NCBI GenBank assembly: GCA_026770705.1
Contig: JANJGN010000007.1
Span: forward strand, 141,980,001-142,044,000
Source of the DNA: Isurus oxyrinchus
Taxonomy: Eukaryota
Reading direction: 5' to 3'
Length of the DNA stretch: 64,000 bases
Of this stretch, positions 35,314 through 64,000 are shown one piece after another (the stretch's first letter is position 1; each line of letters starts with the position of its first letter). The notes under the pieces are model-generated. The model was not told the origin of the DNA, did not search any database, and saw nothing but the letters and a program-made list of their open reading frames with translations. A program made the translations under genes and the position numbers.

Positions 35314-35338
35314 GCTTTCACTTTCACTTTCATTTTTC
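35314..35338 (-). promoter_or_regulatory. Tandem IRF-binding element / ISRE
   Basis: GCTTTCACTTTCACTTTCATTTTTC reads GAAAAATGAAAGTGAAAGTGAAAGC on the minus strand, matching the GAAAGTGAAAGT IRF-E consensus, about 80-100 bp upstream of the ATG at 35416. Confidence 0.75.
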
Positions 35339-35415: not shown

Positions 35416-35467
35416 ATGAATTGCTTTCCAGTGGAACTCGCTATACTTTATTTGGTTTCTTTGGCAG
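35416..35467 (+). CDS. Ig-NLR exon 1: signal peptide
   Basis: [17 protein letters not shown] then G|gtaagt (phase 1). Confidence 0.8.
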
Positions 35468-38400: not shown

Positions 38401-41400
38401 CCCCTCCCTGCCCAATCATAGGCCTCTTTCCCCCCCCACCCCCAATCACAAACCTCTCCTAACTCCTGATCATAGACTACTCCTCCCCCAAACTCCCTAC
38501 CCCACTTCATGCCTCTCCAGTTGGCTGGCTACAGGCTGGGAAACAAAAACAAAAGAAAGACTTGCATTTATGTAGCATTTTCACATCCATAGGCTATCTT
38601 AAACTGCTTCAGTGAAGTACTTTTTAAAGGGTAGCTGCTGTTATAATGTAGGAAACAGATTTTTTCAGAAGTGGCTGAGGTGCCCCACATCCCCCCCTCC
38701 CGACTACATTTTGCACGTCCTTGTCATAAAACTGTTGGCCATTTCTCCCCCATGGAATTTTGTTAAATCAAAAAATGATTCCAATTAGTAATTTATGAAC
38801 CATATTTCATGCCTATTTTATTTCAATATGTATTTTTCTTAATGCAGCATCCCTGGAGGTGGTGGTCATCCCGGCTGTCAATGCCACAATTGGTGAAGAT
38901 GTCCTGCTTGGCTGCTCATTTTTGCACACAGATGAGCTTGATTTGAGATACATTGTGATTGAATGGAACCACAGAGTGGGGAATGATGAAAAAGCAGTTT
39001 GCTTGTTCGACTTTGGAGAATTTGAAAGCTATAGACCAGAATCAAGTCTCTCTATAAATGAAATAAGCAAAGCAAATGCTTCTTTACTCCTAAAGAATGT
39101 TACAATTCATGACATTGGATCATACACCTGCATAGTTACAATATTTTCCGATAAAGCAATGGGGAGAGTTACTTTGGCAGTAACAGGTGAGTGAAGGATG
39201 ATACCTGACGTGTAATTCTTCAGGAAGTTTGACTGGAGTTTTTTTTTTAACTATGTTCACTAGAAATGTTAATGGTGTAAATAAGAATTCCAGCTGACTT
39301 CGGGAAGTGTAAAAATGTACTGATGAGATAGGTACAGAGATGTAAATATTGTCAATAATCGGACTCAGTTTGCTGTAAAATAGCAGATAACTTGCCATCA
39401 TCTAACTGAGCAAAAAAAAGTGTCTATGAATTTTGAGATCTATTCACAGACAGTTTTTAATGTACCCATCGATAAGAGGTGATAAGAGAAAAGCACTTCC
39501 AAAATCTGGTTGAATGAATTTTAACTTACCTCAGTGGTGAAGGTACATTTCTGCATACCAAAATATCCACCAAGGTGGACTGTGTGATATGAGAAGCTTT
39601 TGACAAGGTGCTACATCAAAGGTTACTACACAAAATCAGAGCTCATGGTGCCGGCGGTAACATGGTAGCATGGATAGAGGATCGGTTAGCTAACAGGAAA
39701 CAAGAGAGTCAAATGGGTCATTTTGCAAAATGTCAAAAGCGGAGTACCACAGGGATCAGTGCTGGGGCCTCAACTATTTGTAATTTATATCAATGACCTG
39801 GATGAAGGCACCAATGTATGGCTGCTACATTTGCTGATCACTCAAAGACATTTAGGAAAGTTAGTTGTGAAGAGGACATCAGAGCCTGCAAAGGGGCATA
39901 ATTAGGTTAAGTGAGTGGGCAAAGATTTGGCAGGTGGAGTATAATGTGGGAAAATGTGAACTTGTCAACTGTGACAGAAAGAATAGAAAAGCAGCATATT
40001 AAATGGAGAGAGACTGCAGAACTCTGAGGTATAAAGGGATCTGAGCATCCTAGTCTAAGAATCATAAAAAGTTAGTATGCAAGTACAGCAAGCGATTAGG
40101 AAGGCAAATGGAATGTTGTTGTTTATTGTAAGGGAAATAGAGTATTAAAATAGGCATGTTTTGCTACAATTGTAAACAGTGTTGGTGAAACCGCATCTGG
40201 AGTACAGTGTAGAGTTTTGGCCTCCTGATTTAAGGAAGGATATAAATGTGTTAGAAGCAGTTAGGAGAATGTTCAGACAACTGATACCTGGGATGGAAGG
40301 TGTTATGAGGAAATGTTGGACAGGCTGGGCCTATATCCGTTGGCGTTTAGAAGAATGAGAGGTGATATTATTGAAACGCGTAAGATCCTGAGGGGACTTG
40401 ACAGGGTGGATGCTGAAAGGATGCTTCCCTTTGTGGGAGAGACTAGAATTAGGGGACAGACTCTAATAAGGATTTTGTGGTAGCAGCAAATATAGAGCAT
40501 TCGCTTCAGATCTTGATAAAAGCTGTACGCAAAGATCTAGGGGTCTCTGTCGCACAGTTTTCCCCTTTCCCAAAGTTAGTTTGTTGCTGTCATTAAGTAA
40601 AGAAGTCTCAATGCATCCAACAGCAGTGCCATCAAGCAGGGTAAGCAGCCAATCATATTGAAGTATTCTCATAGACAACAAATCAGGTAGCAAAAACCAC
40701 TTCTAATTTTAAAATTTTTACAGGTAGAGAAATAAATGTTAGGGACATTCACATGGGTATGTGTGGGGGTACCAGACGGTGAGGGAATGGGGGTGAAGGG
40801 CAGCTAAACAGGCATAGTCAAAATTAGAGCCAGAACTTTCAGAAGTGAAATAAGGTAACACTTTTTCATGCAAATTGTGGTAGCAGTTTGGAACTCTCTT
40901 ATGCAAACAGTAATTGGTGCTAGATCAGTTGTAAATTTTAAACCTGAGATAGCCCAATTTTTGTTGGCCAAAGGTATTAAGGCATATGGAACAAAGGTGG
41001 GTATATGGAGTTAGGTCTCAGATCAACCATGATCTCATTGAATGGCAGAACAGACTCGAGGAGTTAAATTGTGCATGGCTAACATGATCATGTTGCATTT
41101 TAGAGTGACATCAATAAAGAAAACCAATAAAAGGAATATAATATTTATCCTTATTCCTTTTGTCTTTGTAGCACCTCCTACAGTTTCAGTAAACACTGCA
41201 AACATTGACATTGAACTTGGGGAAGATAAAGCAATCATATGTGAGATGAAAAATTTTTATCCAGAAGACCATTCTGTCTCTTGGTTCAAACGTGGTTCAA
41301 AAGACACTGAAAGCCAAGTTGACGTCACATCAAGAGCAGTTGCAGGATCACCGCAACAAAATCAAGATGGAACATTTAATCTGCTTTCATTCCTAATCAT

Positions 41401-44400
41401 CAAAGGCATCCAAACAGATGAGGGAGCTTGTTATGTCTGCTTAGTTAGTCATGAAGCTTTAAAAGCACCTTTACAAAATGTTGTCAGCTTGACCATCAAG
41501 GGTGAGTAACAGTAAAGGAGAATGGTATCTAATAAATAGTGAGAACCATTTCATTTTTTGATTCTATTATGGTATGAATTATATTTTATTTTCATTTAGG
41601 AAACCTTGGCTTGAGTTTATGAAATTGAGCCACACAAATAGATCATTACAAATAAAAGACATTATTTAGTTGCTACACATGTAAACATCTATTCCTTACA
41701 ATAAATCTTGCCATATTTTAATTGTCCAGTTTTACTTCATCATTCAGTTTGTTCTTTGCTCATTTGTTCTTTGAAAAATGATTTTTTTGTGAATGTTTTT
41801 CACAGCTCCCTGGGATAGCACAGTAGCAATAATGACAAACTTTCATATGAATTTATTAGAAATGTACAGGACAATAAAGTAGTATCAATATTATATCTGA
41901 ATTAAGTGGAATTTCTAAGTGGATTCTGTTGTTCCTAGGTCAAAATGTGCAAGGGAACAGTTTTGCTTACCATTAGAAACAAGAACTTTTTTAATAATTA
42001 TCCTTAGTGAGCATTCAACCAAATAATCTATTTTTTGATCATTCAGCTATCGGCAGATTCAAAAATCTAGTAACATATTTAAGAATCTCTGAATAAAACT
42101 ACTTGTAGATTTTCAATATGGAATGCACACACTCTCCCCTTTGGAGCACAACTCACTCTCCTGAGCCCAGCGAGCTTAGGTTGGCAGAGCCAGAGTTTTG
42201 TTACCGACAAGTGTACACAGAAGTGGCCCTGCAGTTAAAACACACTCACTGACTCCATTTAATTCTGCAAACCAATGGGAAATTTCCCAGCCGCCCCCCC
42301 CCCCCCCCCCCCCCCCAGTGATAAGTCTACCTCATCTAGGATCAAATAGGGAGCCAGGCTGGATGGGGAGTCATTAACATTTCCCTCGGTGCTTAGAATC
42401 CACTTTACTCAGATGCTAGCTTACACATCTGTCACAGAGAATTAAATTAGTTCTGAATTTCTATCGTCACTTGTATCATCTTGGAAGCACCTTGATCCCA
42501 AAGGGATCCAATTACTCCCTCCTCCACAAGTAGATTGTAACTATTTTGTCAATAGACGATTGACAAATACAGGTTATGCTAGGTGCCTAGCAGGTATCAA
42601 GTGTTCCTCAAAATGGTGGTGAGCATCAGAACTGACCATAAAATGTGTAAGTACATTGCCATCATCTTTCTGGCCACAGCATTGGCATACATTATATATC
42701 ATACTATTTCTGGTATAGCTTGAGAGCAACTGTTTGCCTCTCTGCAAACTAGTCATAGTAGGTACTGAGCCCTGGAAAAATGAGATTGTTGTTCCCAATT
42801 GACATCTTCCAACATTAGTCATCTCAAGTCTCAGTTTCCTCATAAGCTACATACATCTGCCTTCAACTTGGTGGAAGAACCAACTTAGGGCAGCTTGTAT
42901 CATGCTGTACATCTTAGTCTTAATTGTCCCAGGTCCCAATTGCTTTGTGTGTATTTGAGGGACTTTATCAAAGAAGTGTGGCAGCAATAGAGTGCCTTAC
43001 CCTCTAAGTTATTCAGTGAGAAATCAGTATAGGATGGAGCATTTTACTTCGAAGCCTCTTTTATCACGAATCCTTGTCATGGTTTGGTCCTGGATCTTTC
43101 ACACAAGCCATAGGAAGCCTTTCTGTTGCATGCCTAGGCGTATAAATATAAATATAAATGTAAGTTTTTAACAATGCTCCCAAAGCTGTTCTTTTACACT
43201 ATATTGTCATCTCATAGTGCTACTTGTCAACATATGACTTATATTTTAATCGCCTTTTCCTGCTTTCAATATCTGCAAAAGGAAGGTCTGGATGCAAACT
43301 AGCTCTTGATCCTTAGGCTAGAAAAGGAGAAGTATTATTTTCTAAACAATTATCAGGTGCAACATATCTTGGGTGCAGAGTGGGTCTGGGTGGGATACTG
43401 GATCAATAAATAATTATCTTCCTATTGACCTCATAATCTAAATGCCAATGCAGGACCAGAAATTGTAAATGAAATAGGAGTTACTGCTTTCAGTTATTCA
43501 CATGATGCTGCTTCATGCTGTACTGCAACTAAATTTAAAGTTGTTTTCTGTTACAAGCACAGTCTTGCTTTTAGCAACACAGAGGAACAGCAGTGAATAA
43601 TCAATAACACATCTTTGGTCTTGCATTTTTATAGGATCCAAGCCAAGAACAAGATCAGGAACATTGCTCACTTTTCTTATGACTTCTGTGATCACAGCAA
43701 CTGTTTGCTTTGCAACATTTATTTTTTACAGCAGTAAAAGAAAAGGTAAATAACTAAGCTTGTTTTTGGGATGTGGGTGACTTTGGCAAAGCTGCATTTA
43801 TTGCCTCTCTCTTGTTGCCCAGAAAAGGCGATGGTGGTCTGTGTCCTTGAGCCACGGAATTTTATGTGGTGGTGATGCTCTCTCAAGATGGAAAATTTCA
43901 GGATATCGACCGAATTCTGTAGAGGCTGTACTTTTTCAAAAGGGAGTCCCGCGGACCAGAAGGATCTGGTGCTGTCAGGTTCAAAATGGGAAGGTCTGAA
44001 AATTTGTTCGCATTGGGTGAAAAGTGTTTGTGCAGAGATGTGTATGTTACCTTCATTTTAGCTGCATGACCACTTTCCTTCAATTAAATGCTGCTAGTCC
44101 TCTAATGTGCTGTCTGCTTTTAGCGGCAAAGCAGTGGCTGCGGCCTGCCTTTTCTACAGGTGCCAAGCAGGCTGCTCCTATCTCCTGGAGACACTCGGCT
44201 TCCTGCCCAATTAAGACATTTGCATTTAAAAATGGCACGTGATAGCGAGATAGCTGAGATTCCGGGTCGAACCCGGAAATTATCCGAGCTTTGGGTTCTT
44301 GAGCCTGCTTTGAAACCCGGCTCTTAGTGCTTCAACCCATATGTCAGCATTTCAGGAGAGAAATCTGCTTTTGTCCAGTGGAATTGATGGTTGCCAACCG

Positions 44401-47400: not shown

Positions 47401-50400
47401 TTCTGTCTGCAATCAATTCTGCTGGCATAGTGTATGTATTTTACAATGCCTTGCACCTAAAGTTCTGGTCCTCAACACCAGTACTGTACCATATTGCCCA
47501 AATATTCTAGGTGTTGTGGAAACTTTCTCTTTAACTTTACAAATAAGAATATATACCCTTTAAATGTTTACTTCTTGACTAAGGTGGTTCCAGGTTCGAT
47601 TCCTGCCCTCTGCAGGAATCTATAATAGGGTGGGTGTGGGCATACCGAAATTTACCTCAGCATCCATGTTGTCTGCAGAAACCCTTACTGAAAGTCAGCA
47701 TGAGTGAATGTCACAAAGGACAGGGTCAGTCTCAGCTGCTTTACTCTCAGCTCATGCATGAGGAATAGGGAGCAAGAGACACCCATTGCACCGCACTTGA
47801 GCAAGGAGCCAATGCTTTAAGAAAGGAGTGGAGAGAAACTTGGTAGAATAAAAGGGTAAAACATTATTTCTTTTCCTGCTACCAGTTATGGCCCTGAAAT
47901 TCCACAGGGTTCTCCCAATTTTCCTGCTATGGGGTTCTTAGAGAAATGGCAGAAGTTAATCATTTACACCATTTTTCCACGGGTTTCACCCTGCTTCCTC
48001 CTGGAGAACCCAGTAGAAATTCCAGACCTGTGAGTATGAAGTCCTAAGGTAACAGATGTGGGTATGACCAACTTTTGGCATACTCATTACATTACTCAGC
48101 ATTGGAGGCATTAGAGAACTTCACTCAAAAAGAACAGACATTGCTACTTCGACCTGCACTAAGATATAGCATTTTAACTTTTAGCATTAACTTATTCAGA
48201 AAAGGTGACTCTATTACCTGTTCACTAGAACAGAGACAAGCAGAAGTGGGTAAAATAAACAATAATACTACCCTTGCAGAAATATGGGGAAAAAGTTGTT
48301 CTGGAATGAGCATTATTTAATCTGTGATAAAGAGAAAATAGTTAGTGCTTCAGACCATGATATCAAGTTGCCAGACAAAACATTTGCAAAATTATATGAC
48401 AGTTGAATTAAGCCATTCATTTTTGTGCTTATGCCATCTTATTAGCTACAAAATTTCAAATCTTTTAGACAGCTTAGTTTGATTGAGGATAATGTTTGAT
48501 TTTAAATTATTTCATATCATTCTTAACAGGTGCTTGTGACAATACTGGATATTTTCCATCACAAATGAAGCGCACAGACTGGGCAATACATGCAATTGAA
48601 GAAGGTCGTCGGACTGTGGTTAATTACATCAGTCCTAACATACTTCCACTCTTAAATCTTTTAATGAATAAGAAAATAATCTCTGAAGATGACCATAATG
48701 TAATAAACGATAAACCAGACGTTGATAAAGGGCGAACTCTTCTCGACATGTTGAGCCACAGAGGTCAGCAGTCGTGTGCTGATTTTCTCACTGCGCTGAC
48801 AGACACTGAAGACGTTTATCCTGGCTTAAAGAAGTTTGTAACAACACTGCTGGAATCCTACATTGATAAAGATGACAGGCCAATTATTGATCTTCTCCAT
48901 GAAAACCTACCAACTGTTTTATTTGAGGGCACCAATGAAAAAATCCAAATAACCAATTTCCCTGAAGGTAAGTGTGATTCGTCAAAGATAATCTCTTGCA
49001 TGTAATGAGTAGGTATCTCCATGTTTAAGGTTCCAGTATCAGTTTGGACCTGTTGATTTGGAAGTTCTTTAATATTGATGGATGGAAATACAATTTAAAC
49101 TCCAATACGTATAAAACAGACTCTGTATTATTATGGATATGGATTTTTCTAATGCTTGATTTGAAATCTTCACACATAAAGGGGATGATTTTCATCCCCA
49201 TTTTTGAAAGCGGTAGCCGCAGCAGGAGACCTCCAACATCAGTCTTCAGCCACAGTTGCTTGCAAGTAATTTGTTGAACATCACTTCTCTTAAATTGATC
49301 CTTTCCTCATACTCCCCTTCTACTCCTCATCCAGTTAACCATCTGATCTAAGTCATCCATTGACCAATTACAAACTTCCACCCTGGTAATCATAATTGAC
49401 ATATGTGCCATCTAGTTTTATTGAGTCACGGTTACACTGAAGAACTCAATAGGCTTCATTGTCTTTGGTTTCTGGTCTTAGCTGGTTTAAGTTGCCTTCC
49501 TTAGGATTTTCTGGATTGGGTTAGATGAAAGCCATGACAACATAGTTGTGCGTGGTACATTGGAGAGAATGAGCTTCTTGAACAATGAACTCCTTTTGAT
49601 TCCATGCTTTCTTATGTTCCTGTACTCACAGTGCAACAGCTCACTTTTTATGCAGTGGAAAACTTGTATTAGTATATATGTCACATTGTGTTTAATTCAT
49701 GTAGTGTTCTTATTTTTACTGAGTAAAAATATACTTTAAAGAACAAGTTCTATGCCAGATTTGCAGGACGTACATTAAAAATGAATCCATAATTATATCC
49801 AAGATACTAGGTAGAGATTACATTTTTATTTTGGAACCATGGCTCTGTCAGAATCTTTCTAGGAATTTGAAAGAAATGGAATATTTCCTTTCTTTGAAAG
49901 CAAAGCTGTTTTAATGTGATATGATATGTGAAATGTGGTGCAAGCTGAAATTAATTGCATTGTTTTAAGTATAATTATTTTTAAGTCATCCATAACAATT
50001 CATATTTGCTACATTCAGAACGAGTCCAGAATTTGTGTCACTTTGCAGATGATCGCACAAATGCAGGTTGTGTCTTGAAGATATTATGGGACAATCAAGC
50101 TGTTAAATACTCCTGCTAACTGATTTTAAAAATATACTGTGTTTACTACTTAGTGGAATGGAATAGATTATAGTTTAAACAAGCTTGCTGGCACCTTCAT
50201 ATATTTCTACAAGAGACATTTTAATTCTTAAAATGAACTACATTTTATCAGATGGCTTGCATTCCTTTGCACACACAATGGGTGGGATTTTACGGTCCCA
50301 GTCGCAGGCCAGACATACCAGTGCCACCGAAGTCAATGAACTTTCGGCAGACTCACAGCAGCGGGGCCGGAAAATCCTGCCCAGTGAAAGCCAGGTTCGA

Positions 50401-53400
50401 ATTATTTGCCTTCCAGGTAAGCCTTCATTCTTGTAGGGCAAAGCCGTGTAGCAGATGTTGTCCCATTTCATTGGACACAAACGCCGATCTCCTGGGTTCA
50501 ACATAAATCAACCACATAGACCAAGAAAGATTAAATTTGTTTTCTGTGATTTGGATTGTACTTCTTTTCATTTTGTGTCTATTGTATTAATTTATCATAT
50601 GCGTAACATCCAAAATTTGGTGACACGGGGGTATGTGTCAATTCTGTTCTCCACTGAGGAGCCCTGTTCATTATGATAGAATATGGAGGCTCCACTGTGG
50701 CTCATTACTTTTCTCTTGTAATTACAGAAATCTCTGAAGCAGTGGCCACACATAAATACACATTACTAGCACAGATGGAGAGAATAAAGCCATACTTTGT
50801 ATTTGATAACTCCAGACCATTGCTGCAGGAACATTTCACCAGTCTAGTCATTCTCAATGTCCGAGAAAGGAATAAAACTGAACATGAACTCCTGCAACAC
50901 AGAGACTACACAGCGTGCGAGCGTATAGATTTAAAACAGCTTCTTTCACCATCTGCACCTGGGGAAAAGCCACCTCGAGTCACTCTAGTGCAAGGAGTGG
51001 CAGGTATAGGCAAAAGCGTTATGATGCAAAAGCTCACTCATAGTTGGGCCTGTGGAATGATTTATACTGGATTTTATATACTGCTTTATTTCAATTTTCG
51101 GGAGTTAAACACAATCAAGGAAAAAATTAGCCTGACCCAGCTTATTGTACATAGTTACCCTCATCTGAGAGCATTGTGCAATAAGATACTGGAATTTCCT
51201 AGCAGGATCCTATTTTTATTTGATGGATTGGATGAATTCAAATTGTCTCTTGAATTTAACAACCATTCAATTGTTGACCCATCCATTGCTCAACATATTA
51301 ATCATTTGCTTGTAAGTATCATAAAGGGAGACCTTGTTCATGAGGCAACTGTCCTTATTACGTCCCGCCCAACCACAATCGATTTAGATAACAAAACATA
51401 TTTTAATCGATGTGCTGAAATTTTAGGATTTTCTAAAAGGGAAATTGCTGCATACTTTTTGAAGTGCCTCAAGGATAAAAAAGTTGCTGACCATGTCTTT
51501 CGAACAGTGAAGAGCATTGATTCTTTGTTTGGACTTTGCTATGTTCCTGCATTTTGTGATATCCTGTGTTTCTACCTCCATAAATCCTTTCACTGTAAAG
51601 GCAGGTGGTCTCAGATCTCTTCCTTTCCCAGGACAATCACCGATTTGTTCCTCAGATTCACCAAGTGTTTACTGATCTGTAACAGTGATGAGGAAGATGA
51701 CCCTGAGTCCTTCTGCATAGAAGATGATGAAGACAAAAATGAAATAATTAAATTAGCAGAACTTGCATGGGATGGAATCGTCAATAAAACAATAATTTTC
51801 TCAGCAAAAGACATTGAAAGGAACATTGCCAAAAATCCCCAGGACAAAAAATCCTTCTGGAAAAAAATTCTCACCAAAGAGAGCTTGAAAATGATGCAAT
51901 CCCACATTTGGCAATTTTTCCATCTGACACACCAGGAGTTTTTTGCAGCACTTTATTGCATTTCTGCAAATGAACCTGGTGTGGATCATGTGCATAAAGC
52001 CTTCAGTTCAAAGAGTAATGTATTTGAGATTGTACTGAGGTTCACTGCTGGCCTAGTCTCTCATAGCAACAGAAAACTCGTGAAGCAGTTGCTGCCTCAA
52101 CACCAGGTTAAAGAAAGAGAAGTCTTTGATGCTATCAAAAATGTTGCTGCAGTTGAAGTTCCAAAAGAAGACACGCTAACTCCAGAAAATATTACAAAAT
52201 ATACAGTGCACAAAAGACAAAAACTAACAGCCTCGCATTGTCTCTATGAAGCGGCAAATGAAAATTTAACACAACTAGTTGCCTCCCAAACCAGTGATGT
52301 TGTAAATTTTTCTTACATTTCTTTGAATGTGACTGACTGCACTGCAATTGCAAACCTCCTTTCTTACCATACCACGATTGAAACATTGGAATTAGATGGA
52401 TGTAAAGCTGGAGCTTCTGGTTTCCAAAGACTGGAGTCTGTTTTCTCAAAAGTCAAGACATTGAGGTATTAAATTTTGTTTTTTAGATATGAATTAGAAG
52501 TAACAAAATGCTTTGGCATGTTAGTGATTCAGCCACTGTGTCTTTTAAAGATAATCCTACTAAACTTTTATTAATGTAAACATTGTTAATATTCTATGTC
52601 CCATCAACCAAATAGATGAGTCTTGCACCTTGCATTTAAATGATACTATAAATAATCTACACACATGCTAAAGTAAATATTAAGGTTGCTTTATGGCTTT
52701 CAAATTGAGTTGTTCTGCAATTGATCCATTTATATTGTGGCTAATATTTTCAAATCTTTACTTAAAATTCATATATTTTATATTGAACGTTTTTAAAATA
52801 GCAAAAACACAACATGAAAACATTAATATTTGCTCACATATATTCATTTAATTTGTGATTAAACATAGTATTAGAGGGAAATGGTCCAACACACTTGCTA
52901 ACAGGCTACATGAACACCTTTAGTTTAAAATGCTTAGACAGTTGCTGTAAATACTATGATCGTTTACTGAAAGTTGGGGTCTAGCCTAAGATATTTTCTC
53001 TGGCACAGTGGTGTTGGGCAAGATAGCACTGTCATCTCTGAGTCAGAAGGCTGTGGGTTAGATTTAAGCATATATTTCAGGATGACACTCTACTGCAGTA
53101 CTGACGGGTTGGTACACTGTTGGAGGTGCTATCTTTTGGATGGGCTGCTAAACTAAGGCCCTATCTGCCCCCTCAGGTGGATGTAGAAGATCCATCATAC
53201 TATTCGAAGAAGAGCAGGGGAGTTCTCTGTGGTGTCCCTGCCAATTATTATCCTTCAGCCAACATTACTAAAAAACAATTGTCTGATCGTTATCTCATTG
53301 TTGTTTGTAGGAGCTTGCTGTGTTCAAATTGGCTGTCACATTTTCTGCATTATAACAGTGACTACACTTGAAAAGTATTTCATTGGCCATAATGCATTTG

Positions 53401-56400
53401 GGACATCCTGAAGTCATGAAAGCCACTTTATAAATGCAAATCTTTTAATAAAATTTAAAGATAAATGCTAAGTAAACTCTCGCAAAATATTTAAGGCCTG
53501 AAATTCTTTGGGGTTCTACCAGTCTCTATATCTATATCTAGCAAGAGATCAGTGACATGCCTAGGAAAATGACAATAACTGTTTAGCTGTACCCCAATTT
53601 CAGCCCATTTGTTGTTAAAAACCTCATCCATGCCTATGTCACCTCTAGATTTGACCATTCCAATGTTCTCCTAGCTAGCTTTCCATCCTTCATCATTCAT
53701 TGAACTTCAACTCAACAAAACTCTGCTGCCTGTATCCTAACCTTACTCGCCCATCATATCTTTTCTCACTGACCTTCATTGGCTCCTGATCCCCCAGTAC
53801 CTCAAATTAATTTTCATCCCCTGTTTAAATCTCCCCATATTTTTACCCTTTCAAACTTCTCTAACTTGCCACAACTCTGCTTGAAAACTCTATTCTTCTA
53901 CCTTTAGCTTTTTGAGCATTTCCCCACCCCTTCACCCCATGATTGGCAAAGGTGCCTTTCAGCTCCTGTGTTTTGGAGTTCTGTTCTTACACCCCTTTGC
54001 CTGAGCAGCCCTTTTTCTCCTAAAAAATCTTGCTTCCATAGCTCAGCCTTTGGTCAGCCCTCTAATATCGCCTCTTTTTGCTCATCATCGAGTTTTCCCT
54101 TATGCCTTCATTAAGTGCTTTTGAATATTCTTCTATATTAAAGCTGCTATATAAATACAAGTTGTTGTTGCTAGGTGTGAGTAAGAGACAAGAAGAAAAA
54201 AATTCTGTTTAATAAGTGAGAACATGCTAGCACTGCTTAAATTGAATGATTGTAGCTCAGTAAGTGAATATTTAACTACTTTAAAAATACATTCTGCATT
54301 CACAAAGGTAGAGCTAACAAAAAGATGATGTTTTAACTTACAGTTTAGAAGGAAACATGCTGGAGGATGAAGGAGCAGAGATCATTGCGAATGCACTCAA
54401 AAGTGAAACATGTAGAATAGAAACCTTAAGGTAAAATTCCTATGTCTGTTTCACTTTTGTACATTACATCATTAAAATGGCACAATAGTAAAATTAAAAA
54501 TGAACTACAAGTTTCAGTTAAGTACAAAAATATAGACAAAAGATTGAAAATTGATTGGAAAAAAATATTTGTTGGGAGTTAAGATTCACAGCCCAAGAGT
54601 GACAAAGTTCATTATGAGCCCTTTCCTTCAGCAGTTATCTCATAACGATATGATCAGAGATTCATAACTTAAATGGCGGCTCGAAGGGCTGAATAACCTA
54701 CTCCTGCTCCTATTTTCTATGTTTCCCGATTCTAGTGACAAGCAGTGTTATACATACAACAAACTATGAAATAAACTTTAACACATAAAAATAACTGCTT
54801 TCTATTTGGTCTATATTGTAAGAACTTGCATTTCATTTTTCTACGGCAGTAAATAATTCCCCACATGCCATCCAATGCTGATAACTAGACTAATCAGGAA
54901 TACTTCCAAACCAATTATCATTAAATCAGATGCTATAATTGAGATGATGGAATATTGTGTTTGCACATAATATTTGGATATTGCTAACTTCAAGTCCAGA
55001 CATATGGTACAAATGATACAGTGACTCAATGCCTGGATTCTTCCCAGGTTGAAACACAATTCCATAGGAGAGAGAGGAGCAGCCCAAATAGCTGAAGCAT
55101 TGAAAACAAACAGCAGTCTGAAAACATTGGGGTATGTATTGAACCTGGCAAATTAGAATACTTGTCAAACTTTCCAGAAAAAAATGATTTTGCTGCATGC
55201 CTGTCATGATGCATTTAGTTCTCTTACTTTTAACTAAATCCTTGTTTTCACTAGATTAAGAGCAAACACTGTCCGTGCCAAAGGTGCCCATTCAATAGCT
55301 AAAGCTCTGGAGATCAACACAACATTGCAAGTTTTCGGGTAAGTTTTTTTTTCTATGTAAATTGTTTTTTTTTATGTGCAGTACTTTGCTACTTACTGAA
55401 CTTCAGGGTTGCACTATTTGCTTTGAAATCTCCATAATGGCTTTTTATATTGACCAGCAGGAACTCTATATTTGTTAAAGTGTTAACATTTAAATTTGTG
55501 AATTTTGTTATTTGGGTTTTACGAAAACTAAGATAAAAGCAATAAACTTATGTCACCTAGCTGTAACGTTATACACAATTACATTATCAAGTAATTAATG
55601 AAAGAATTGTCCCTCACATTTCTTGATAAAAATATGGTCTGAACCCCCTTGGGAGATGTGCTGTGTCACCACCATTTCTTCAATACCTTGTAAGGCACAT
55701 AATTTCCTGCAAAGCAAATGACAACCACTGATGGAACAATTGGCAGACTTCCTATAAGCTAGGAGTTCCCACTATACAACTCCAGTGTGACCCAGTGTAT
55801 TGATGACAGCTGGTATGCAGAGGCATACTGGCCTCCATAAAGGTGATTATGGACCAGATTGGCCTCCTTGTCCTTAAGACTATTGCCAGAGGTGCTGGGA
55901 AGTGGCATTGGGCAACCCTCTTTCCCAAAGGGCAAATCAGCACCAGAGTTCCTGCCAGACATGGAGAGACTGTTGCTGAAACAGCCTTACGCCTGACCAA
56001 TGGAAATAAGATTCCTTTTGGTTCACCCTGCAAACTAGTGAAATAGGTGCCACTCGAGGAATTTTGGAGCCAATAAACTCCTCCACCCACCAAGGTAGTC
56101 AGGCAAAATCCAAGCTTACAACCTGTATAATTAGGTTTTGGTTGATTTGCATACCTGGCAATTTTATGGGTCCAACAACTCATGACTCTGTATGGGATAT
56201 GTATTCCAAGAGTTGACATTCTCATTTTGTTTTGGTTCAAAGTTTGCTTAGATTTTTTTTTTACAATTTATGTCAAAAAACATGCTAATCCTAAAGTGCT
56301 AAAATTGAAAATTTGGTATGATTTCAATGTAATAGAAAGTTATGTTTAAGTTTGATTATTTTATCAGCTTTTTGGAACTGTGCCTTTTGTGAGAAATTTA

Positions 56401-59122
56401 GTATTCCTTCCCTCACCCACTTTATCACACACTATCCCAGATAGAGATATGAACAAATTACCTGCTGCAGATTTCCATATAATATGATGATCTTTAGGAA
56501 ATCTGCAAGGGCCAGGTTGGATAGTTATTTCTCTGCCCTTTTCCTTCCCTCTTGTGGCCTTTACTTGACGCGGCCACCATGTCATAACAGGACTCACCAC
56601 ATGAGAGGATGCAAGCATGAGCCTGCAGTCTACAAATTGATGGCACAACACATTGGTGCTCTAAAGCCTTGCACCATCATTCCTGAAAAGTCCAGCTTTC
56701 CTTTTTCTTCCCCTGTTTCTCCCCTCTCTTGAAGGCACAACTTCCTTTTGCAGGATGTAAAATGTACATGGCTGTACTTCTTCATGCACAAGTCTAGATA
56801 GTAAGCATTTGCAGGCTTTTTAAACAAAAAAAATATTGCAAGTGTATCTAAACCTGAAATAAAAGCAAAATACTGTGGATGCTGGAAATCTGAAACAAAA
56901 ACAGAAAATGCCAGAAGAACTCAGCAGGTCTAACACCATCTGTGGAGAGAAAAAAAAGAGTTAATATTTCGAGTCCATATGACTCTTCTTCAGGGCTTTG
57001 AAGGAGAGTCATACGGATTTGAAACATTAACTCTGTTCTTTTTTTCTCTCCACAGATGCTGTTAGACCTGCTGAGTTTTTCCAGCGTTTTCCATTTTTGT
57101 ACCTGAACCTGATACTGTCCATTTCTGTAGGCTACGGAGCAGAAGTCACAGCATCAAAACCTAGAACGTTTGGCTCATTATCATTTTCCCTCTTTCAGCT
57201 ATGGGCACTGATCCAACCATAACATTCCATCACTGCCTAAAGTTAAATCAGCACAGGTTGAAGATTGAATCTGGGAGCTTAGTGATCTTTATGGCTTTGT
57301 TCCACACTTCTCACTGTTAATAAACGGAGTTATTTTGGAGCTAAGAGTGCAGTTTCCATTATAGAAGAGCATTTAAATATATGTCTTTGTCCTATTTCAG
57401 CTTACAATTAAACAAGATAGGGGACGAAGGCGCAAAGTACATGGCACAAGCATTAAAAAAAAATCGCAGTTTGATTGAATTAAGGTAAGTGCTCAAATTT
57501 AAACTCACAGAAGAACATTTTCTCTAATCCCATCTCAAACCATGTACGTTTACTTTCATATTAGAACTTGAGTTTGATTTTACAAATAGATGCTAATTGG
57601 CTCATGCATTAGCACTTGCCTGGCTGCTCATATGCTGACCCTGGCTAATTTTTGCAATGAGCTTCAATTTTATTGGATAATATTTAATGGAGGTGACAAG
57701 AGTCTCACCCGCCATTTAAACAACCAGCCTGAGGCCCTTGCCGCCTCTTTTTGGGAAGGCCTGCCAAATTAAGTGCCACTCAGGCACTTAACTGGTCAGT
57801 GGCAGGCCTTCCCCAGGATCAAGGACCCCGGGCCAGAAGTCCCACCCACCGGGAGCTGCTGGCCAATCAGAGGCCAACGGTACTTCATTGTTCAGCAGCG
57901 CCACCAGGGGGCAATGACTCCTGATGGTACTACACTCACACAAGGCCTAAGATCACCAAGGGATCTTAGTTTGAGTGATGGCTGGGTGGGGATCGCCAGG
58001 AAGGGACCGCAAAGGGTTGGCAGCAAGGATGGTGGGTGGCTCTCAGCAGGCCCCCCCTTCCCGAAGCTGGGTCCCTTGGTCAGGCACTGAGTGCCTTTGA
58101 ACAAGGGACCCTCCCAGAAGCCCACTGGGTTAAAATCCTGGAACTCCCTTCCTTATAGCACCATGGGTGTACTTACACCACATGTACTGCAGCAGTTTAA
58201 TAAAGCAACTCACCACCTCCTTCTCAAGGGCAGTTAGGGATGGGCAATAATGCTGGCCCAGCCAGCGAAGCCCACATCCCGAGAAAGAGTAAACAAAAAT
58301 CACTGTGTTAGGATCAAGGCGCACTTCCAAGCTAACTCATTCTTTCACAGGACCATAAGACTGTGGAAATCTTTACCATCTGTTCAGTCTTTCCTTCCTC
58401 TTTCTATCTTCAGCTTTTTAAAATTCAAGTTTGGCATAAACTTCCTGATTTACCTCAACACTCCATTTCCTCTTTTCAACTTGGAAGTTGTGTGCACGAT
58501 GGACTTAGCTTTTCAAATTGATCTCTCAATTTAGTTATTTGTTTTTAATTTAATCTAATATGCAAGACAGATTTTATGACAGATGGCTCCTGCACTCACT
58601 CAATCCCACAGCTATTTTGTTTGGCAAGTAACTGCTTTTATTGTCAACCTGTTAGTGAATAATATAGCCATGTATGTATTGATTACTCTGTTTAAAATTC
58701 AACTTAAGTATTTCAACATTTTTAGCATTCCTTTATCTTGTGGTGTCCTGAGTGAAGAAGTTTAATTTAACAAGAGAGTTAGTTACTAATTTAAGAACAA
58801 GTGCTATGTTTCAAGTTTTATTTTTTATTCTTGCCAAAACTATTAACGCTTTCATTTGCATTTTTTTTATCATTTTCCATTAAATAATGGAAGTAATTGT
58901 TCAGAAAGGCTCCATTAAAACAAATGTGTTACATTGTTTTGTTATTCTGTGATTCTTCATATTTAAAGGATTTTATTTTACATGTTACCTGTACCATGTG
59001 GGTTGCTGAATAATAAAATGGACAATACTTGTCTGTAGGCTTGGAGACAATGATATCACTGAAAAAGGAAGTGGTTACTTTCGAAGTGCTTTAGAAGTGA
59101 ATGGCACACTGGAAGAGTTGTG
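35416..59122 (+). CDS. Predicted type I transmembrane Ig-NLR fusion protein (SP-IgV-IgC1-TM-IgC1-like-CARD-NACHT-LRR), 3' end not found in window
   Basis: Exons 35416-35467, 38848-39186, 41172-41501, 43635-43745, 44564-45001, 48530-48967, 50728-52465, 54344-54430, 55048-55131, 55255-55338, 57401-57484, 59039-59122. All GT-AG, phase 1 up to the NACHT exon and phase 2 through the LRRs, with no stop over 3869 nt. Confidence 0.8.
36152..36162 (+). promoter_or_regulatory. Second ISRE-like motif in intron 1
   Basis: GAAACTGAAAC (reverse complement GTTTCAGTTTC). Confidence 0.4.
37196..38252. mobile_element. TIR element with a nested CR1 3' fragment (about 37255-37740)
   Basis: TIRs GGCCCAGATCTTCCGG / CTGGAGGAGCTGGACC, AAT TSD; homologous copy at 60062-60777. 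Confidence 0.65.
38848..39186 (+). CDS. Ig-NLR exon 2: Ig V-set domain (B7/B7-H6/tapasin-like)
   Basis: [10 protein letters not shown]...IEW...[21 protein letters not shown] (canonical C-W-DxGxYxC); three N-glycosylation sequons (NAT, NAS, NVT); phase 1-1. Confidence 0.92.
39595..41070 (+). mobile_element. CR1 RT 3' fragment, interrupted at about 40463-40800
   Basis: [33 protein letters not shown]. Confidence 0.85.
41172..41501 (+). CDS. Ig-NLR exon 3: Ig C1-set domain
   Basis: [15 protein letters not shown]...NQDGTF...[13 protein letters not shown]; phase 1-1. Confidence 0.92.
43635..43745 (+). CDS. Ig-NLR exon 4: transmembrane helix
   Basis: ttgcatttttatag|GA...AAAG|gtaaat, 111 nt, phase 1-1; [37 protein letters not shown] (23 uncharged residues followed by a basic stop-transfer motif); absent from the supplied ORF track. 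Confidence 0.85.
44564..45001 (+). CDS. Ig-NLR exon 5: degenerate C1-like Ig domain (predicted cytoplasmic)
   Basis: VAPKV...[17 protein letters not shown]...[11 protein letters not shown]...[10 protein letters not shown]; F-strand Cys replaced by Phe; long polar insert; phase 1-1. Confidence 0.82.
46403..46949 (-). mobile_element. Young 5'-truncated CR1 insertion
   Basis: Uninterrupted [11 protein letters not shown]...[14 protein letters not shown]...WNSLP; TSD GAGTGA. Confidence 0.9.
48530..48967 (+). CDS. Ig-NLR exon 6: CARD (death-fold) domain plus linker
   Basis: [12 protein letters not shown]...[19 protein letters not shown]...[24 protein letters not shown]...YPGL fits the CARD helix pattern; phase 1-1. 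Confidence 0.85.
50728..52465 (+). CDS. Ig-NLR exon 7: FISNA-like segment, NACHT NTPase, HD1/WH/HD2 and first LRR
   Basis: Walker A GVAGIGKS (50994-51017), FNFRELN, Walker [10 protein letters not shown], sensor [31 protein letters not shown]; ends TTGAG|gtat (phase 2). Confidence 0.95.
53005..53450 (+). mobile_element. Deu-domain SINE
   Basis: GAGTCAGAAGG head; ...GACTACACTTGAAAAGTATTTCATTGG...GGGACATCCTGAAGTCATGAAAG...ATAAATGCAA tail. Confidence 0.65.
53590..54172 (+). mobile_element. L2-like LINE 3' fragment
   Basis: [18 protein letters not shown] motif; GCTATATAAATACAAGTTGTTGTTG tail. Confidence 0.7.
54344..54430 (+). CDS. Ig-NLR LRR exon (87 nt)
   Basis: [29 protein letters not shown]; phase 2-2. 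Confidence 0.9.
55048..55131 (+). CDS. Ig-NLR LRR exon (84 nt)
   Basis: [28 protein letters not shown]; phase 2-2. Confidence 0.92.
55255..55338 (+). CDS. Ig-NLR LRR exon (84 nt)
   Basis: [28 protein letters not shown]; phase 2-2. Confidence 0.9.
56859..57100. mobile_element. Palindromic element made of two inverted Penelope 3' ends
   Basis: Arms are reverse complements of each other and homologous to 31285-31420; TSD ACCTGAA; relatives at about 31620-32050 and 59848-60050. Confidence 0.7.
57401..57484 (+). CDS. Ig-NLR LRR exon (84 nt)
   Basis: [28 protein letters not shown]; phase 2-2. Confidence 0.92.
59039..59122 (+). CDS. Ig-NLR LRR exon (84 nt)
   Basis: [28 protein letters not shown]; phase 2-2, ends in donor gtaaga. 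Confidence 0.9.
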
Positions 59123-59219
59123 GTAAGAATTTTATTTTATTTGTTCATGTGTTAAAAAAAGTTGTTCATTTAGAATTTATTGGTGGAAGGCTGACTTTTT
59201 ATTGGAAATTTGCATTTTT

Positions 59220-61180: not shown

Positions 61181-61230
61181 TTTTAAAGCTAGTCGATTTC
61201 TGCTCTGAAATGTCAGTCCTGTGTATCTGT

Positions 61231-63957: not shown

Positions 63958-64000
63958 TAAACACCCCTGCAAACTTCACTCTCCCTACCACAGCAGCTGC

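What the first reader, a model, noticed from the sequence alone, without database searches (positions are those of the whole stretch)
35416..59122. Predicted single-pass transmembrane NOD-like receptor: B7/tapasin-type Ig ectodomain fused to CARD-NACHT-LRR
Seen: twelve exons join through canonical GT-AG sites in matching phase into one stop-free frame of at least 1289 codons, encoding signal peptide, IgV, IgC1, TM, C1-like, CARD, NACHT with intact Walker A/B, and LRRs. I found no convincing terminal exon after the Ig part and no separate start exon before the CARD. Established: vertebrate NLRs (NOD1/2, NLRC3/4/5, CIITA, NLRPs, teleost FISNA/B30.2 NLRs) are soluble proteins without signal peptides, and V-C1-TM is the layout of B7-H6/NCR3LG1 and tapasin-type proteins. 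I know of no described protein combining the two. Inference: extracellular or luminal ligand binding could cluster a membrane-tethered NACHT/CARD platform (RIPK2-, ASC- or caspase-type signalling), or the NLR could sense cytosolic signals at a membrane and control surface display of the Ig ligand.
Basis: partly seen in the sequence, partly recalled or inferred. Interest (0 to 1): 0.96.

Follow-up and report, generated by a model that had tools for sequence, protein, structure and literature searches.

The report
Shark membrane-anchored NOD-like immune receptor
This shark gene really does join a cell-surface, B7-H6-like antibody-fold ectodomain and a membrane anchor to a CARD-NACHT-LRR danger sensor, a sensor type that is cytosolic in all characterised vertebrate examples I know of; it is made as one spliced mRNA, is conserved in at least 12 shark and ray species, and I found no paper describing it.

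Summary
Twelve exons (35416-59122, + strand) have canonical AG/GT sites, compatible phases and no stops: 3869 nt, frame still open. A conserved 27-residue terminal exon lies beyond the window.

Exon-by-exon Pfam gives V-set, C1-set, a hydrophobic TM exon, a degenerate C1-like domain, CARD, NACHT/HD2 and five 28-residue LRR exons.

The fusion is transcribed. In four RNA-like runs (three samples, two closely related lamnid species), single contigs splice TM to C1-like to CARD at exactly the predicted GT..AG junctions. Contig lengths fit a near-full-length fused mRNA.

RefSeq holds full-length orthologues (1289-1346 aa) in 12 elasmobranch species, auto-named "NLRC3-like" or "NOD1-like".

- The ectodomain is closest to B7-H6/NCR3LG1.
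- The NACHT is closest to NLRP3-type NLRs.
- ATPase motifs are intact.
- The cytosolic C1-like domain lost its second cysteine in every species.

Bichirs carry a separate butyrophilin-like-TM-NACHT family, and an AU test rejects common NLR ancestry (p 0.0008). A sea-cucumber Ig-TM-NACHT receptor is the only published precedent I found.

Function is untested. I favour cytosolic sensing that also clusters a conserved surface ligand (inside-out), over outside-in signalling or mere anchoring.

The scan has no note of this on other DNA.

The parts
35316..35331 (-). Triple GAAA repeat (GAAAGTGAAAGTGAAA), an ISRE/IRF-E-like element 85-100 nt upstream of the ATG. It is a candidate interferon/IRF-responsive promoter element.
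   Evidence: It is the only match to GAAANNGAAANNGAAA in 64 kb, against 0.02 expected; sequence read. Function is inferred and conservation was not tested.
35416..35467 (+). Exon 1: ATG (A at -3) plus 17 codons of hydrophobic signal-peptide-like leader, ending in phase 1.
   Evidence: A hydrophobic peak at residues 10-28 is seen in 11 of the 12 orthologue models (the Narcine model has a different short N-terminus), and the conserved MNCF start is. SignalP was not available.
38848..39186 (+). Exon 2: IgV domain of B7 type, with both cysteines and the invariant NAS and N-x-T sequons.
   Evidence: Pfam V-set 1.5e-8. PDB matches: B7-H3 5e-13, B7-H4, B7-H6 1.7e-6, PD-L1. Shark-versus-ray identity is 72%.
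41172..41501 (+). Exon 3: IgC1 domain with a conserved cysteine pair (YxCxVxHEAL).
   Evidence: Pfam C1-set 1.2e-12. PDB matches: IgM C-mu and B7-H6 3pv6 at 1.5e-14. Shark-versus-ray identity is 70%.
43635..43745 (+). Exon 4 (111 nt): basic stalk, 22-residue transmembrane helix and a YSSKRK stop-transfer.
   Evidence: Translation. It is the only strong hydrophobic segment between the leader and Walker A in all 12 orthologues. It is spliced to exon 5 in 4 of 4 runs.
44564..45001 (+). Exon 5 (438 nt): cytosolic C1-like Ig domain. The first Cys and the strand-C Trp are kept, and the second Cys is Phe in all species. It carries a disordered acidic insert.
   Evidence: Pfam C1-set 3.4e-6. The AF2 model has 9 strands, pLDDT 64 and pTM 0.63. 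Foldseek matches Fab CL domains (TM about 0.53), the TAPBPR C domain and B7-H6.
48530..48967 (+). Exon 6 (438 nt): CARD (six helices) plus a linker of about 50 residues. It is an in-frame cassette that is skipped in predicted isoforms of two species.
   Evidence: Pfam CARD 2e-9. PDB matches: ICEBERG 5e-7, NOD1 CARD 3e-3. AF2 gives six helices with pLDDT up to 95, and all top Foldseek hits are CARDs. It is spliced to exon 5 in 4 of 4 runs. CARD-less isoforms are P0001 and P0155.
50728..52465 (+). Exon 7 (1738 nt): NACHT ATPase, winged helix, HD2 and the start of the LRR. Motifs present: Walker A GVAGIGKS, Walker [10 protein letters not shown], sensor [16 protein letters not shown].
   Evidence: Pfam NACHT 2e-33 and HD2 2e-11. 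Motifs. The closest solved structure is NLRP3 at 2e-41, then NOD2 at 9e-32.
54344..54430 (+). Exon 8: LRR unit (87 nt, phase 2).
   Evidence: matches P0001 residues 996-1029.
55048..55131 (+). Exon 9: LRR unit (84 nt).
55255..55338 (+). Exon 10: LRR unit (84 nt).
57401..57484 (+). Exon 11: LRR unit (84 nt).
59039..59122 (+). Exon 12: LRR unit (84 nt). The frame is still open. The conserved terminal exon (ILVNNIS...NPNLRLN*, 27 aa in all orthologues) is not in the window.
   Evidence: One RNA contig extends 2508 nt past the CARD exon, about 347 nt beyond exon 12.

Best explanation
WHAT IT IS (about 0.93 likely; shown). This is a single, intact, transcribed gene of a lamnid shark. It is the orthologue of Carcharodon carcharias 'protein NLRC3-like isoform X1' (1317 aa). 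It encodes a type I membrane protein with the following parts in order. First comes a signal peptide. Then comes a glycosylated B7-H6-like IgV-IgC1 ectodomain. One transmembrane helix follows. Directly under the membrane sits a disulfide-less C1-like Ig domain. A CARD comes next, then an NLRP3-like NACHT ATPase with intact nucleotide motifs, and finally a short ribonuclease-inhibitor-type LRR. The gene appears once per species in the protein search and is conserved across sharks and rays.

HOW IT WORKS (inferred; about 0.5 of the total). The cytosolic NACHT-LRR half is the switch. A cytosolic trigger releases LRR autoinhibition and drives ATP-dependent oligomerisation at the membrane. Oligomerisation would then do two things. 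It would build a CARD platform that recruits a CARD effector of the caspase-1/ICEBERG or RIPK2 type. It would also cluster the conserved ectodomain, so that a conserved host counter-receptor on lymphocytes can read the cell's infected or stressed state. NKp30 is the obvious candidate receptor, because B7-H6 is its ligand. This is the inside-out logic of butyrophilin BTN3A1, with an NLR in place of B30.2. The IRF/ISRE-like promoter element suggests interferon-inducible expression.
For: Architecture:
- Exon model, splice sites and phases.
- Per-exon Pfam.
- Single contigs splice 43745>44564 and 45001>48530 with GT..AG in 4 of 4 runs, with introns empty apart from a repeat. Contig lengths are 4070, 3813, 3120 and 2182 nt. 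They have 813, 785 and 557 nt upstream of the TM exon, where exons 1-3 account for 721 nt. They have 2268-2508 nt downstream of the CARD exon.
- Variants in the second species' contigs reproduce 5 of the 6 residue differences to the Carcharodon protein, so two species show the fused mRNA.
- 12 full-length orthologues carry V-set + C1-set + CARD + NACHT + LRR.

Topology:
- There is a single strong TM segment.
- Ectodomain cysteine pairs and the NAS/N-x-T sequons are invariant. Sequons in the C1-like domain are not conserved, and its second Cys is Phe everywhere.

Mechanism:
- The LRR and WH-HD2 are the most conserved parts (82% and 81% shark versus ray), so a cytosolic control module is under strong constraint.
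- IgV and IgC1 are 72% and 70% conserved, and the protein search returned one locus per species. This argues for a conserved host partner rather than diverse microbial ligands.
- The ectodomain is nearest to B7-H6/NCR3LG1.
- Walker A, Walker B, sensor and WHD-His motifs are intact.
- CARD fold.
- ISRE-like element.
- The published outside-in echinoderm Ig-TM-NACHT receptor lacks both LRR and CARD (PMC8699970), unlike this one.
Against: - There are no functional data of any kind.
- The runs are only guessed to be RNA by their metadata. Contigs also cannot show isoform proportions, transcript starts or minor forms, so an internal promoter upstream of the CARD exon is not excluded.
- The signal peptide and TM helix were judged by hydropathy only. 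Basic residues flank the TM on both sides.
- The presence of NKp30 in this species, and any binding to it, were not tested.
- The C1-like model is only moderate (pLDDT 64).
- Conservation of the ectodomain fits a conserved extracellular ligand just as well, which would be the outside-in reading.
- The CARD implies cell-autonomous signalling whatever the direction.
Confidence: 0.5

Rival explanations
1. Outside-in receptor. The gene and topology are the same, but the Ig ectodomain is the sensor. Binding of an extracellular or phagosomal ligand (host or microbial) clusters the receptor. This forces NACHT/CARD oligomerisation and downstream caspase or NF-kB signalling, as in the sea-cucumber AjNLRC4 or a TLR-like design.
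For: A published precedent for an Ig-TM-NACHT surface receptor acts this way (PMC8699970). The extracellular V-C1 is conserved. The CARD is placed to signal in cis.
Against: The LRR, which is the usual NLR sensing and autoinhibition module, is retained and is the most conserved region (82%). The echinoderm receptor lacks both LRR and CARD. B7-family V-C ectodomains are typically ligands for lymphocyte receptors (established knowledge). A single conserved locus per species in the search does not look like a diversifying microbe binder.
Confidence: 0.27
2. Anchor only. The Ig-TM module merely fixes a conventional cytosolic-sensing CARD-NLR to the plasma or endosomal membrane. This would be a hard-wired version of the membrane recruitment that NOD1 and NOD2 obtain by palmitoylation. 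The ectodomain would have no signalling partner.
For: NOD1/NOD2 need membrane association to signal (established knowledge). The cytosolic half is a complete NLR with intact motifs.
Against: A mere anchor would not need two Ig domains. Those domains keep 70-72% identity, invariant cysteines and invariant sequons across the shark-ray divergence. Bichirs independently joined a different B7-family ectodomain to an NLR, which suggests that the ectodomain type matters.
Confidence: 0.15
3. Two neighbouring genes: a B7-like Ig gene and a CARD-NLR that starts at the Met inside the CARD exon. On this reading the joined frame is a by-product of phase 1-1 exons, and the joined RNA is a read-through chimera or a minor isoform.
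For: Phase 1-1 exons join in frame by default. A Met lies 12 codons into the CARD exon. Contigs cannot give isoform proportions.
Against: In 4 of 4 runs, the only contigs listed at the CARD exon also carry the C1-like exon, and in three of them the TM exon too, in two species. That Met is L or V in three species. The C1-like exon has only this position between TM and CARD, and is conserved there in 12 species with its disulfide lost, as expected for a cytosolic location. I found no terminal exon for an Ig-only gene.
Confidence: 0.04

Closest known systems
B7-H6 / NCR3LG1 (ligand of the NK receptor NKp30)
   Same: It has the same layout of signal peptide, IgV, IgC1-set domain and single TM. It is the only solved protein that matches both Ig exons (V 1.7e-6, C1 1.5e-14). 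Turtle NCR3LG1 is the best non-orthologous full-length hit (E 3e-32, 27% identity).
   Different: Mammalian B7-H6 has a short signalling tail. Here the tail is a C1-like domain plus CARD-NACHT-LRR, more than 1000 residues. Orthology and NKp30 binding were not tested.
NLRP3-type and NOD1/NLRC-type cytosolic NLRs
   Same: It shares the NACHT with intact Walker A/B, sensor and WHD histidine, the HD2, and the C-terminal LRR. NLRP3 is the closest solved NACHT (2e-41). The nearest sequences in the tree are soluble 'NLRP3/12-like' proteins of elasmobranchs, coelacanth and sturgeon. The CARD and the 84-nt LRR exons resemble NOD1 and NLRC3.
   Different: No other NLR cluster is more than 35% identical, and the clade has a long stem of about 1 substitution per site. 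It has a signal peptide, an ectodomain and a TM, which no characterised vertebrate NLR I know of has. RefSeq's names 'NLRC3-like' and 'NOD1-like' are automatic names, not orthology.
Butyrophilins (for example BTN3A1): B7-family IgV-IgC ectodomain, TM, cytosolic B30.2 sensor
   Same: The design logic is the same: a B7-family ectodomain coupled through one TM to a cytosolic sensing domain. BTN3A1 signals inside-out to gamma-delta T cells (established knowledge).
   Different: The IgC here is C1-set, not the butyrophilin C2-set_3 type. The cytosolic sensor is CARD-NACHT-LRR, not B30.2.
Polypterid butyrophilin-like-TM-NACHT-LRR proteins (RefSeq predictions in Polypterus senegalus and Erpetoichthys calabaricus, for example XP_039601942.1)
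   Same: The layout is SP-IgV-IgC-TM-(weak CARD)-NACHT-LRR.
   Different: The IgC is of butyrophilin type, there is no cytosolic C1-like domain, and the family is multigene. The NACHT is not sister to the shark clade: the AU test rejects a joint clade (delta lnL 75.9, p 0.0008). They are predictions only, and I checked no RNA.
AjNLRC4 of the sea cucumber Apostichopus japonicus (PMC8699970)
   Same: It is the only published membrane NACHT receptor with extracellular Ig domains that I found.
   Different: It is an invertebrate protein with two TM segments and no CARD or LRR. It is reported to bind microbes directly and to drive phagocytosis through actin.

Membership tests
NLR (NACHT-LRR STAND ATPases) | NACHT domain with Walker A, Walker B, sensor 1 and the WHD histidine | tested here: met
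   Pfam NACHT 2e-33 and HD2 2e-11. Motifs [21 protein letters not shown] and FFHLTHQEF.
NLR (NACHT-LRR STAND ATPases) | C-terminal leucine-rich repeats | tested here: met
   Five 84/87-nt LRR exons. LRR_6 hits in the orthologues.
NLR (NACHT-LRR STAND ATPases) | N-terminal effector domain (CARD, PYD or BIR) directly preceding the NACHT | tested here: met
   CARD 2e-9. Six-helix model whose top structural matches are all CARDs.
Vertebrate NLRs as characterised | Soluble cytosolic protein without signal peptide or transmembrane segment | tested here: not met
   Hydrophobic leader plus one TM segment in the orthologues (leader in 11 of 12 models, TM in all 12). Ig ectodomain with conserved disulfides and sequons.
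NLRC3 (the RefSeq name) | Orthology to NLRC3 | tested here: not met
   Apart from the orthologue cluster, no representative exceeds 35% identity. The nearest rows are NLRP3/12-like proteins. The best solved match is NLRP3.
B7 family, B7-H6/NCR3LG1 subtype | IgV followed by a C1-set IgC, then a single TM | tested here: met
   NCR3LG1 is the next-best hit.
B7 family, B7-H6/NCR3LG1 subtype | Binds NKp30; orthology or synteny with NCR3LG1 | not testable with these tools
The key papers are not held.
Butyrophilin | Butyrophilin-type IgC (C2-set_3) and a cytosolic B30.2/SPRY domain | tested here: not met
   The IgC is C1-set and there is no SPRY hit. It resembles the family in design only.
Tapasin / TAPBPR | Tapasin N-terminal domain plus IgC1 and TM | tested here: not met
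   There is only a weak V-domain match to TAPBPR (6.7e-5) and a fold-level match of the C1-like domain. There is no N-terminal tapasin domain.
Echinoderm AjNLRC4-type membrane NACHT receptor | Ig-TM-NACHT-TM, lacking CARD and LRR | tested here: not met
   This protein has one TM and has both CARD and LRR. The comparison is with PMC8699970.

The most novel reading that the evidence does not exclude
Elasmobranchs hard-wire cytosolic innate sensing to lymphocyte recognition in one polypeptide. An NLR that detects an intracellular danger signal oligomerises. This directly clusters its own B7-H6-like ectodomain as an induced-self ligand for NKp30-type receptors on NK or T cells. The result would be an ancient inside-out surveillance device, analogous to butyrophilin and gamma-delta T-cell sensing, that evolved independently at least twice in fishes (sharks and rays with a B7-H6-like head, bichirs with a butyrophilin-like head).
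Probability: 0.3. Interest if true: 0.95.

Novelty: new variant of a known kind. Interest (0 to 1): 0.85.

Why it matters
Textbook vertebrate NLRs are soluble cytosolic sensors. Here a complete CARD-NACHT-LRR sits behind a signal peptide, a B7-H6-like ectodomain and a transmembrane helix. This layout is conserved in 12 shark and ray species spanning both groups, and it is expressed as one mRNA.

If the topology is confirmed, there are several consequences.

- It gives a natural experiment on how NLR oligomerisation works when protomers are tethered in a membrane.
- It offers a direct physical link between cytosolic innate sensing and a B7-type surface molecule that lymphocytes could read.
- It gives a new angle on the old relationship between B7-H6/NKp30, butyrophilins and the MHC region.
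- A different B7-family head was independently joined to an NLR in bichirs, which suggests that the combination is selectively useful rather than an accident.
- The gene is hidden in databases under misleading automatic names, so flagging it also corrects annotation.
- Scyliorhinus canicula, a laboratory shark, has an orthologue (P0162), which makes the questions testable.

Tried and rejected
- **Joined protein not built.** Every search used single exons by reference. The database orthologue P0160 (about 96-100% identical per exon) served as the full-length proxy.
- **Terminal exon.** A motif search (LVNN, NISNDG, KNPNL) and a phase-2 acceptor scan over 59123-64000 found nothing. The terminal exon is therefore outside the window.
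- **Papers not held.** Flajnik et al. 2012 and Ohta & Flajnik 2015 on shark B7H6/NKp30 are not held.
- **Homodimer test.** Complex prediction on two copies of the C1-like domain gave 'no answer' (score 0.01). This is no evidence either way, and I make no dimerisation claim.
- **ESM Atlas.** The ectodomain returned only generic V-C1 IgSF clusters.
- **CARD fold search.** Foldseek E-values are weak (0.18 or worse) although all top hits are CARDs. The search does not discriminate the downstream partner.
- **Intron-4 read-through isoform.** Reading through intron 4 would give an Ig-only protein ending KRKGK*. I found no AATAAA nearby and no intronic contig, so I dropped the idea.
- **Common origin with the bichir family.** This was rejected by the AU test.
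- **Literature.** Eight full-text searches found no description of a vertebrate Ig-TM-NLR. The library lacks most subscription journals, so absence is not proof.

Full report
**Observation**

The window is eukaryotic DNA. I redetermined each border:
- exon 1, 35416-35467
- exon 2, 38848-39186
- exon 3, 41172-41501
- exon 4, 43635-43745
- exon 5, 44564-45001
- exon 6, 48530-48967
- exon 7, 50728-52465
- five short exons at 54344-54430, 55048-55131, 55255-55338, 57401-57484 and 59039-59122

Every acceptor is AG and every donor is GT. No exon has an internal stop. Exons 2-6 are phase 1-1, and from the end of exon 7 the phase is 2. The eleven split codons read A, A, G, V, G, E, S, R, G, G, R. The sum is 3869 nt, that is 1289 codons plus two bases, with the frame still open.

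All searches used single exons by reference.

Pfam on the separate exons gives:
- V-set, 1.5e-8
- C1-set, 1.2e-12
- nothing for the 36-codon exon 4, which reads as a basic stalk, 22 hydrophobic residues and YSSKRK
- C1-set, 3.4e-6, on the first third of exon 5
- CARD, 2e-9
- NACHT, 2e-33, with NLRC4_HD2, 2e-11

**Is it one gene?**

Matching phase is weak evidence by itself, because Ig-superfamily exons are typically phase 1-1. The serious rival was therefore a B7-like gene lying next to a CARD-NLR gene that starts at the Met 12 codons into the CARD exon. Two independent lines of evidence remove most of that possibility.

The first line is RNA.
- A search for sequencing runs with 43600-52500 returned runs holding 0.24-0.32 of the sampled words. 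The four exons in that stretch make up 0.31 of it.
- I laid four of those runs (three samples, three studies, two species labels) on 43300-49200. Depth fell only on the three exons and on one repeat at about 46250-47040. The introns were otherwise nearly empty, apart from two or three short contigs at depth 2-2.5.
- In all four runs a contig joins 43745 to 44564, and a contig joins 45001 to 48530, with GT..AG ends.
- The contigs are 4070, 3813, 3120 and 2182 nt long.
- The longest has 813 nt upstream of the TM exon, where exons 1-3 account for 721 nt. It has 2269 nt downstream of the CARD exon, where exons 7-12 account for 2161 nt. It is therefore essentially the whole fused mRNA.
- Another contig runs 2508 nt past the CARD exon, about 347 nt beyond exon 12.
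- The run metadata only guess 'RNA'. However, intron-free spliced contigs with empty introns behave as RNA.
- The variants in the second species' contigs reproduce five of the six amino-acid differences between the window's CARD exon and the Carcharodon carcharias protein. The fused transcript is therefore seen in the window's species and in a sister lamnid.

The second line is orthologues.
- A whole-library HMMER search with the NACHT exon found only one representative above 35% identity. It is Narcine bancroftii XP_069757801.1, 'NLRC3-like isoform X4', whose NACHT starts at residue 426 behind IgV, IgC1, TM and the C1-like domain.
- Searching with its first 500 residues returned full-length proteins of 1289-1346 aa carrying V-set, C1-set, CARD, NACHT, HD2 and LRR.
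- They come from Narcine, Pristis, Mobula, Hemitrygon, Pristiophorus, Heptranchias, Heterodontus, Carcharodon, Chiloscyllium, Scyliorhinus, Rhincodon and Mustelus.
- All carry automatic names: 'NLRC3-like', 'NOD1-like' or 'uncharacterized'.
- The window is about 96-100% identical per exon to the Carcharodon protein P0160. I used P0160 as the full-length proxy.
- In the 12-species alignment, the Met inside the CARD exon is L or V in three species. A separate NLR start at that position is therefore not conserved.
- All orthologues end with a conserved 27-residue exon (ILVNNIS...NPNLRLN). It is absent from the window, so it lies beyond base 64000. This fits the open frame at 59122, and 1289 + 1 + 27 = 1317 aa, the length of P0160.

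**Anatomy and topology**

- Eleven of the 12 orthologue models have a hydrophobic leader; the Narcine model has a different short N-terminus. All 12 have exactly one strong hydrophobic segment, at about residues 250-275, before Walker A.
- The IgV and IgC1 domains keep their cysteine pairs. Two sequons are kept in all species: NAS, and the N-x-T of LKNVT.
- The juxtamembrane stretch is only about 6-8 residues long. After it comes the exon-5 domain.
- The exon-5 domain keeps the first cysteine (SLACAVLWF) and the strand-C tryptophan, but has Phe in place of the second cysteine in all 12 species. Its N-x-S/T motifs are not conserved.
- AlphaFold with the orthologue alignment gives a nine-strand beta sandwich with a disordered acidic insert (pLDDT 64, pTM 0.63). 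Foldseek matches Fab constant light domains (TM about 0.53, rmsd 3.5), the TAPBPR C domain and B7-H6.
- This domain is therefore an Ig C1-type fold that has lost its disulfide, as expected in the reducing cytosol.
- The CARD exon folds as six helices (pLDDT up to 95). All top structural hits are CARDs. By sequence it is nearest to ICEBERG (5e-7) and to the NOD1 CARD (3e-3).
- The NACHT has Walker A GVAGIGKS, Walker [10 protein letters not shown], sensor TSRP and the WHD histidine motif FFHLTHQEF.
- CARD and NACHT need the cytosol and there is one TM. The only coherent topology is therefore type I, with the V-C1 head outside or luminal. SignalP and DeepTMHMM were not available, so this is an inference from hydropathy, cysteines and sequons.

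**Affinities of the two halves**

- The IgV exon matches B7-H3 (5e-13), B7-H4, B7-H6 (1.7e-6), PD-L1 and, weakly, TAPBPR.
- The IgC1 exon matches IgM C-mu and B7-H6 (1.5e-14 over the whole domain).
- B7-H6 is the only solved protein that matches both exons. Turtle NCR3LG1 proteins are the best non-orthologous hits to the N-terminal 500 residues (E 3e-32).
'Tapasin type' is not.
- The NACHT is closest to NLRP3 among solved structures (2e-41), then NOD2 (9e-32).
- In trees of the NACHT region, the shark-ray clade has 100% support and a long stem of about 1 substitution per site. Its nearest neighbours by path are soluble 'NLRP3/12-like' proteins of elasmobranchs, coelacanth and sturgeon.
- The RefSeq names are therefore not orthology statements.

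**Conservation**

Mean identity between sharks and rays, by region:

| Region | Identity |
|---|---|
| IgV | 72% |
| IgC1 | 70% |
| stalk/TM | 48% |
| C1-like | 54% |
| CARD | 71% |
| NACHT | 75% |
| WH-HD2 | 81% |
| LRR | 82% |

The ectodomain is almost as constrained as the ATPase, and the LRR is the most constrained part.

**A second, independent family, and a precedent**

- Among the 150 best NACHT relatives, only one other protein had a TM-like segment between Ig domains and the NACHT. It is Polypterus senegalus XP_039601942.1.
- A search with its N-terminal part found at least 15 gene models in Polypterus and Erpetoichthys. Their layout is SP, IgV, butyrophilin-type IgC (PF22705), TM, a weak CARD, NACHT and LRR.
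- In an IQ-TREE analysis of 58 NACHT regions, both groups are monophyletic.
- Forcing the two groups into one clade costs 75.9 log-likelihood units (AU p 0.0008).
- Taken with the different IgC type and the absence of a cytosolic C1-like domain, this points to independent fusions.
- These bichir proteins are predictions only. I did not check RNA for them.
- The only publication of a membrane NACHT receptor with Ig ectodomains that I found is the sea-cucumber AjNLRC4. It has two TM segments and lacks CARD and LRR (PMC8699970).
- The whale shark genome paper catalogues shark NLRs without mentioning Ig or TM parts (PMC8455134).
- Eight full-text searches found no description of a vertebrate Ig-TM-NLR. 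The library lacks most subscription journals, and two key B7H6/NKp30 papers are not held.

**How it probably works**

Shown: the gene, its splicing across the critical junctions, its conservation and its intact motifs.

Inferred: the topology and everything functional.

I give about 0.93 to 'a real type I membrane NLR'. Within that, I split the mechanism as follows.

1. Inside-out, or coincidence, coupling: about 0.5 of the total.
   - A cytosolic trigger acts on the NACHT-LRR switch.
   - Oligomerisation at the membrane builds a CARD platform for a caspase-1-like or RIPK2-like effector.
   - Oligomerisation also clusters the conserved B7-H6-like head for a conserved host receptor such as NKp30.
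   - The arguments are these. The LRR is retained and highly conserved, whereas the outside-in echinoderm receptor lacks it. The ectodomain is conserved and one locus per species was found, which suits a host partner rather than varied microbial ligands. B7-family heads are usually ligands. Butyrophilin BTN3A1 already works this way with a B30.2 sensor.
2. Outside-in signalling: about 0.27.
3. Pure membrane anchoring: about 0.15.
4. Two genes, or a minor chimera: about 0.04.

Two further observations bear on regulation.
- A triple GAAA repeat (GAAAGTGAAAGTGAAA) lies 85-100 nt upstream of the ATG. It is the only such match in the window, against 0.02 expected, and it suggests IRF/interferon control.
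- RefSeq isoforms without the CARD exon in Narcine and Pristiophorus suggest a CARD-less variant produced by in-frame exon skipping. I could not check this in reads.

**Limits**

- The homodimer test of the C1-like domain gave no answer, and I make no claim from it.

**Verdict**

It is a new architectural variant built from two known families. It is already present in databases under uninformative names and, as far as I could find, is undescribed in vertebrates.

Noticed in passing
window 19750-28800: About 9 kb of degenerate TG/CA-rich simple repeat. It reads as CVCV.../THTH... in all frames, with GC skew +0.6 to +0.7 and AT skew about -0.65. It is interrupted by eight N runs, which I left untouched.
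   Followed up: no
window 61357-64000 (+): An ARID4-like sequence lies downstream of exon 12. It is probably inside the last intron of the NLR gene, because the terminal exon lies beyond the window. It carries a Tudor-knot/chromo-barrel hit (2e-8). The pieces are contiguous but switch reading frame without introns, which looks like a processed pseudogene.
   Followed up: partly
window 46250-47040 (intron 5); similar ORFs at 12118-12561 (-), 37483-37674 (+), 59330-59947 (+): These look like fragments of one interspersed repeat family, possibly LINE-derived (shared motif ...NLWNSLP...; Pfam gave no hit). The copy in intron 5 collects depths of thousands from many divergent contigs in all four runs, so the family appears highly transcribed genome-wide.
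   Followed up: no
P0090, P0168-P0190 (Polypterus senegalus, Erpetoichthys calabaricus): A multigene family of predicted SP-IgV-butyrophilin-type IgC-TM-(weak CARD)-NACHT-LRR proteins, auto-named 'NLRP3-like'. Its NLR half is not sister to the shark clade (AU p 0.0008).
   Followed up: partly
P0001 (Narcine isoform X4), P0155 (Pristiophorus isoform X2): Predicted isoforms join the C1-like exon directly to the NACHT exon, skipping the 438-nt in-frame CARD exon. This could be a natural CARD-less regulatory form. All four laid runs included the CARD exon.
   Followed up: no
P0164 (Mustelus asterias), residues about 276-305: The model repeats the first 30 or so residues of the C1-like exon just after the TM. 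This is either a partial exon duplication or a prediction or assembly artefact.
   Followed up: no
window 13470-15605 (-): A run of ORFs on the minus strand (for example 14353-14607, 13470-13841) looks like retrotransposon coding sequence. I ran no domain search on it. It is unrelated to the finding.
   Followed up: no
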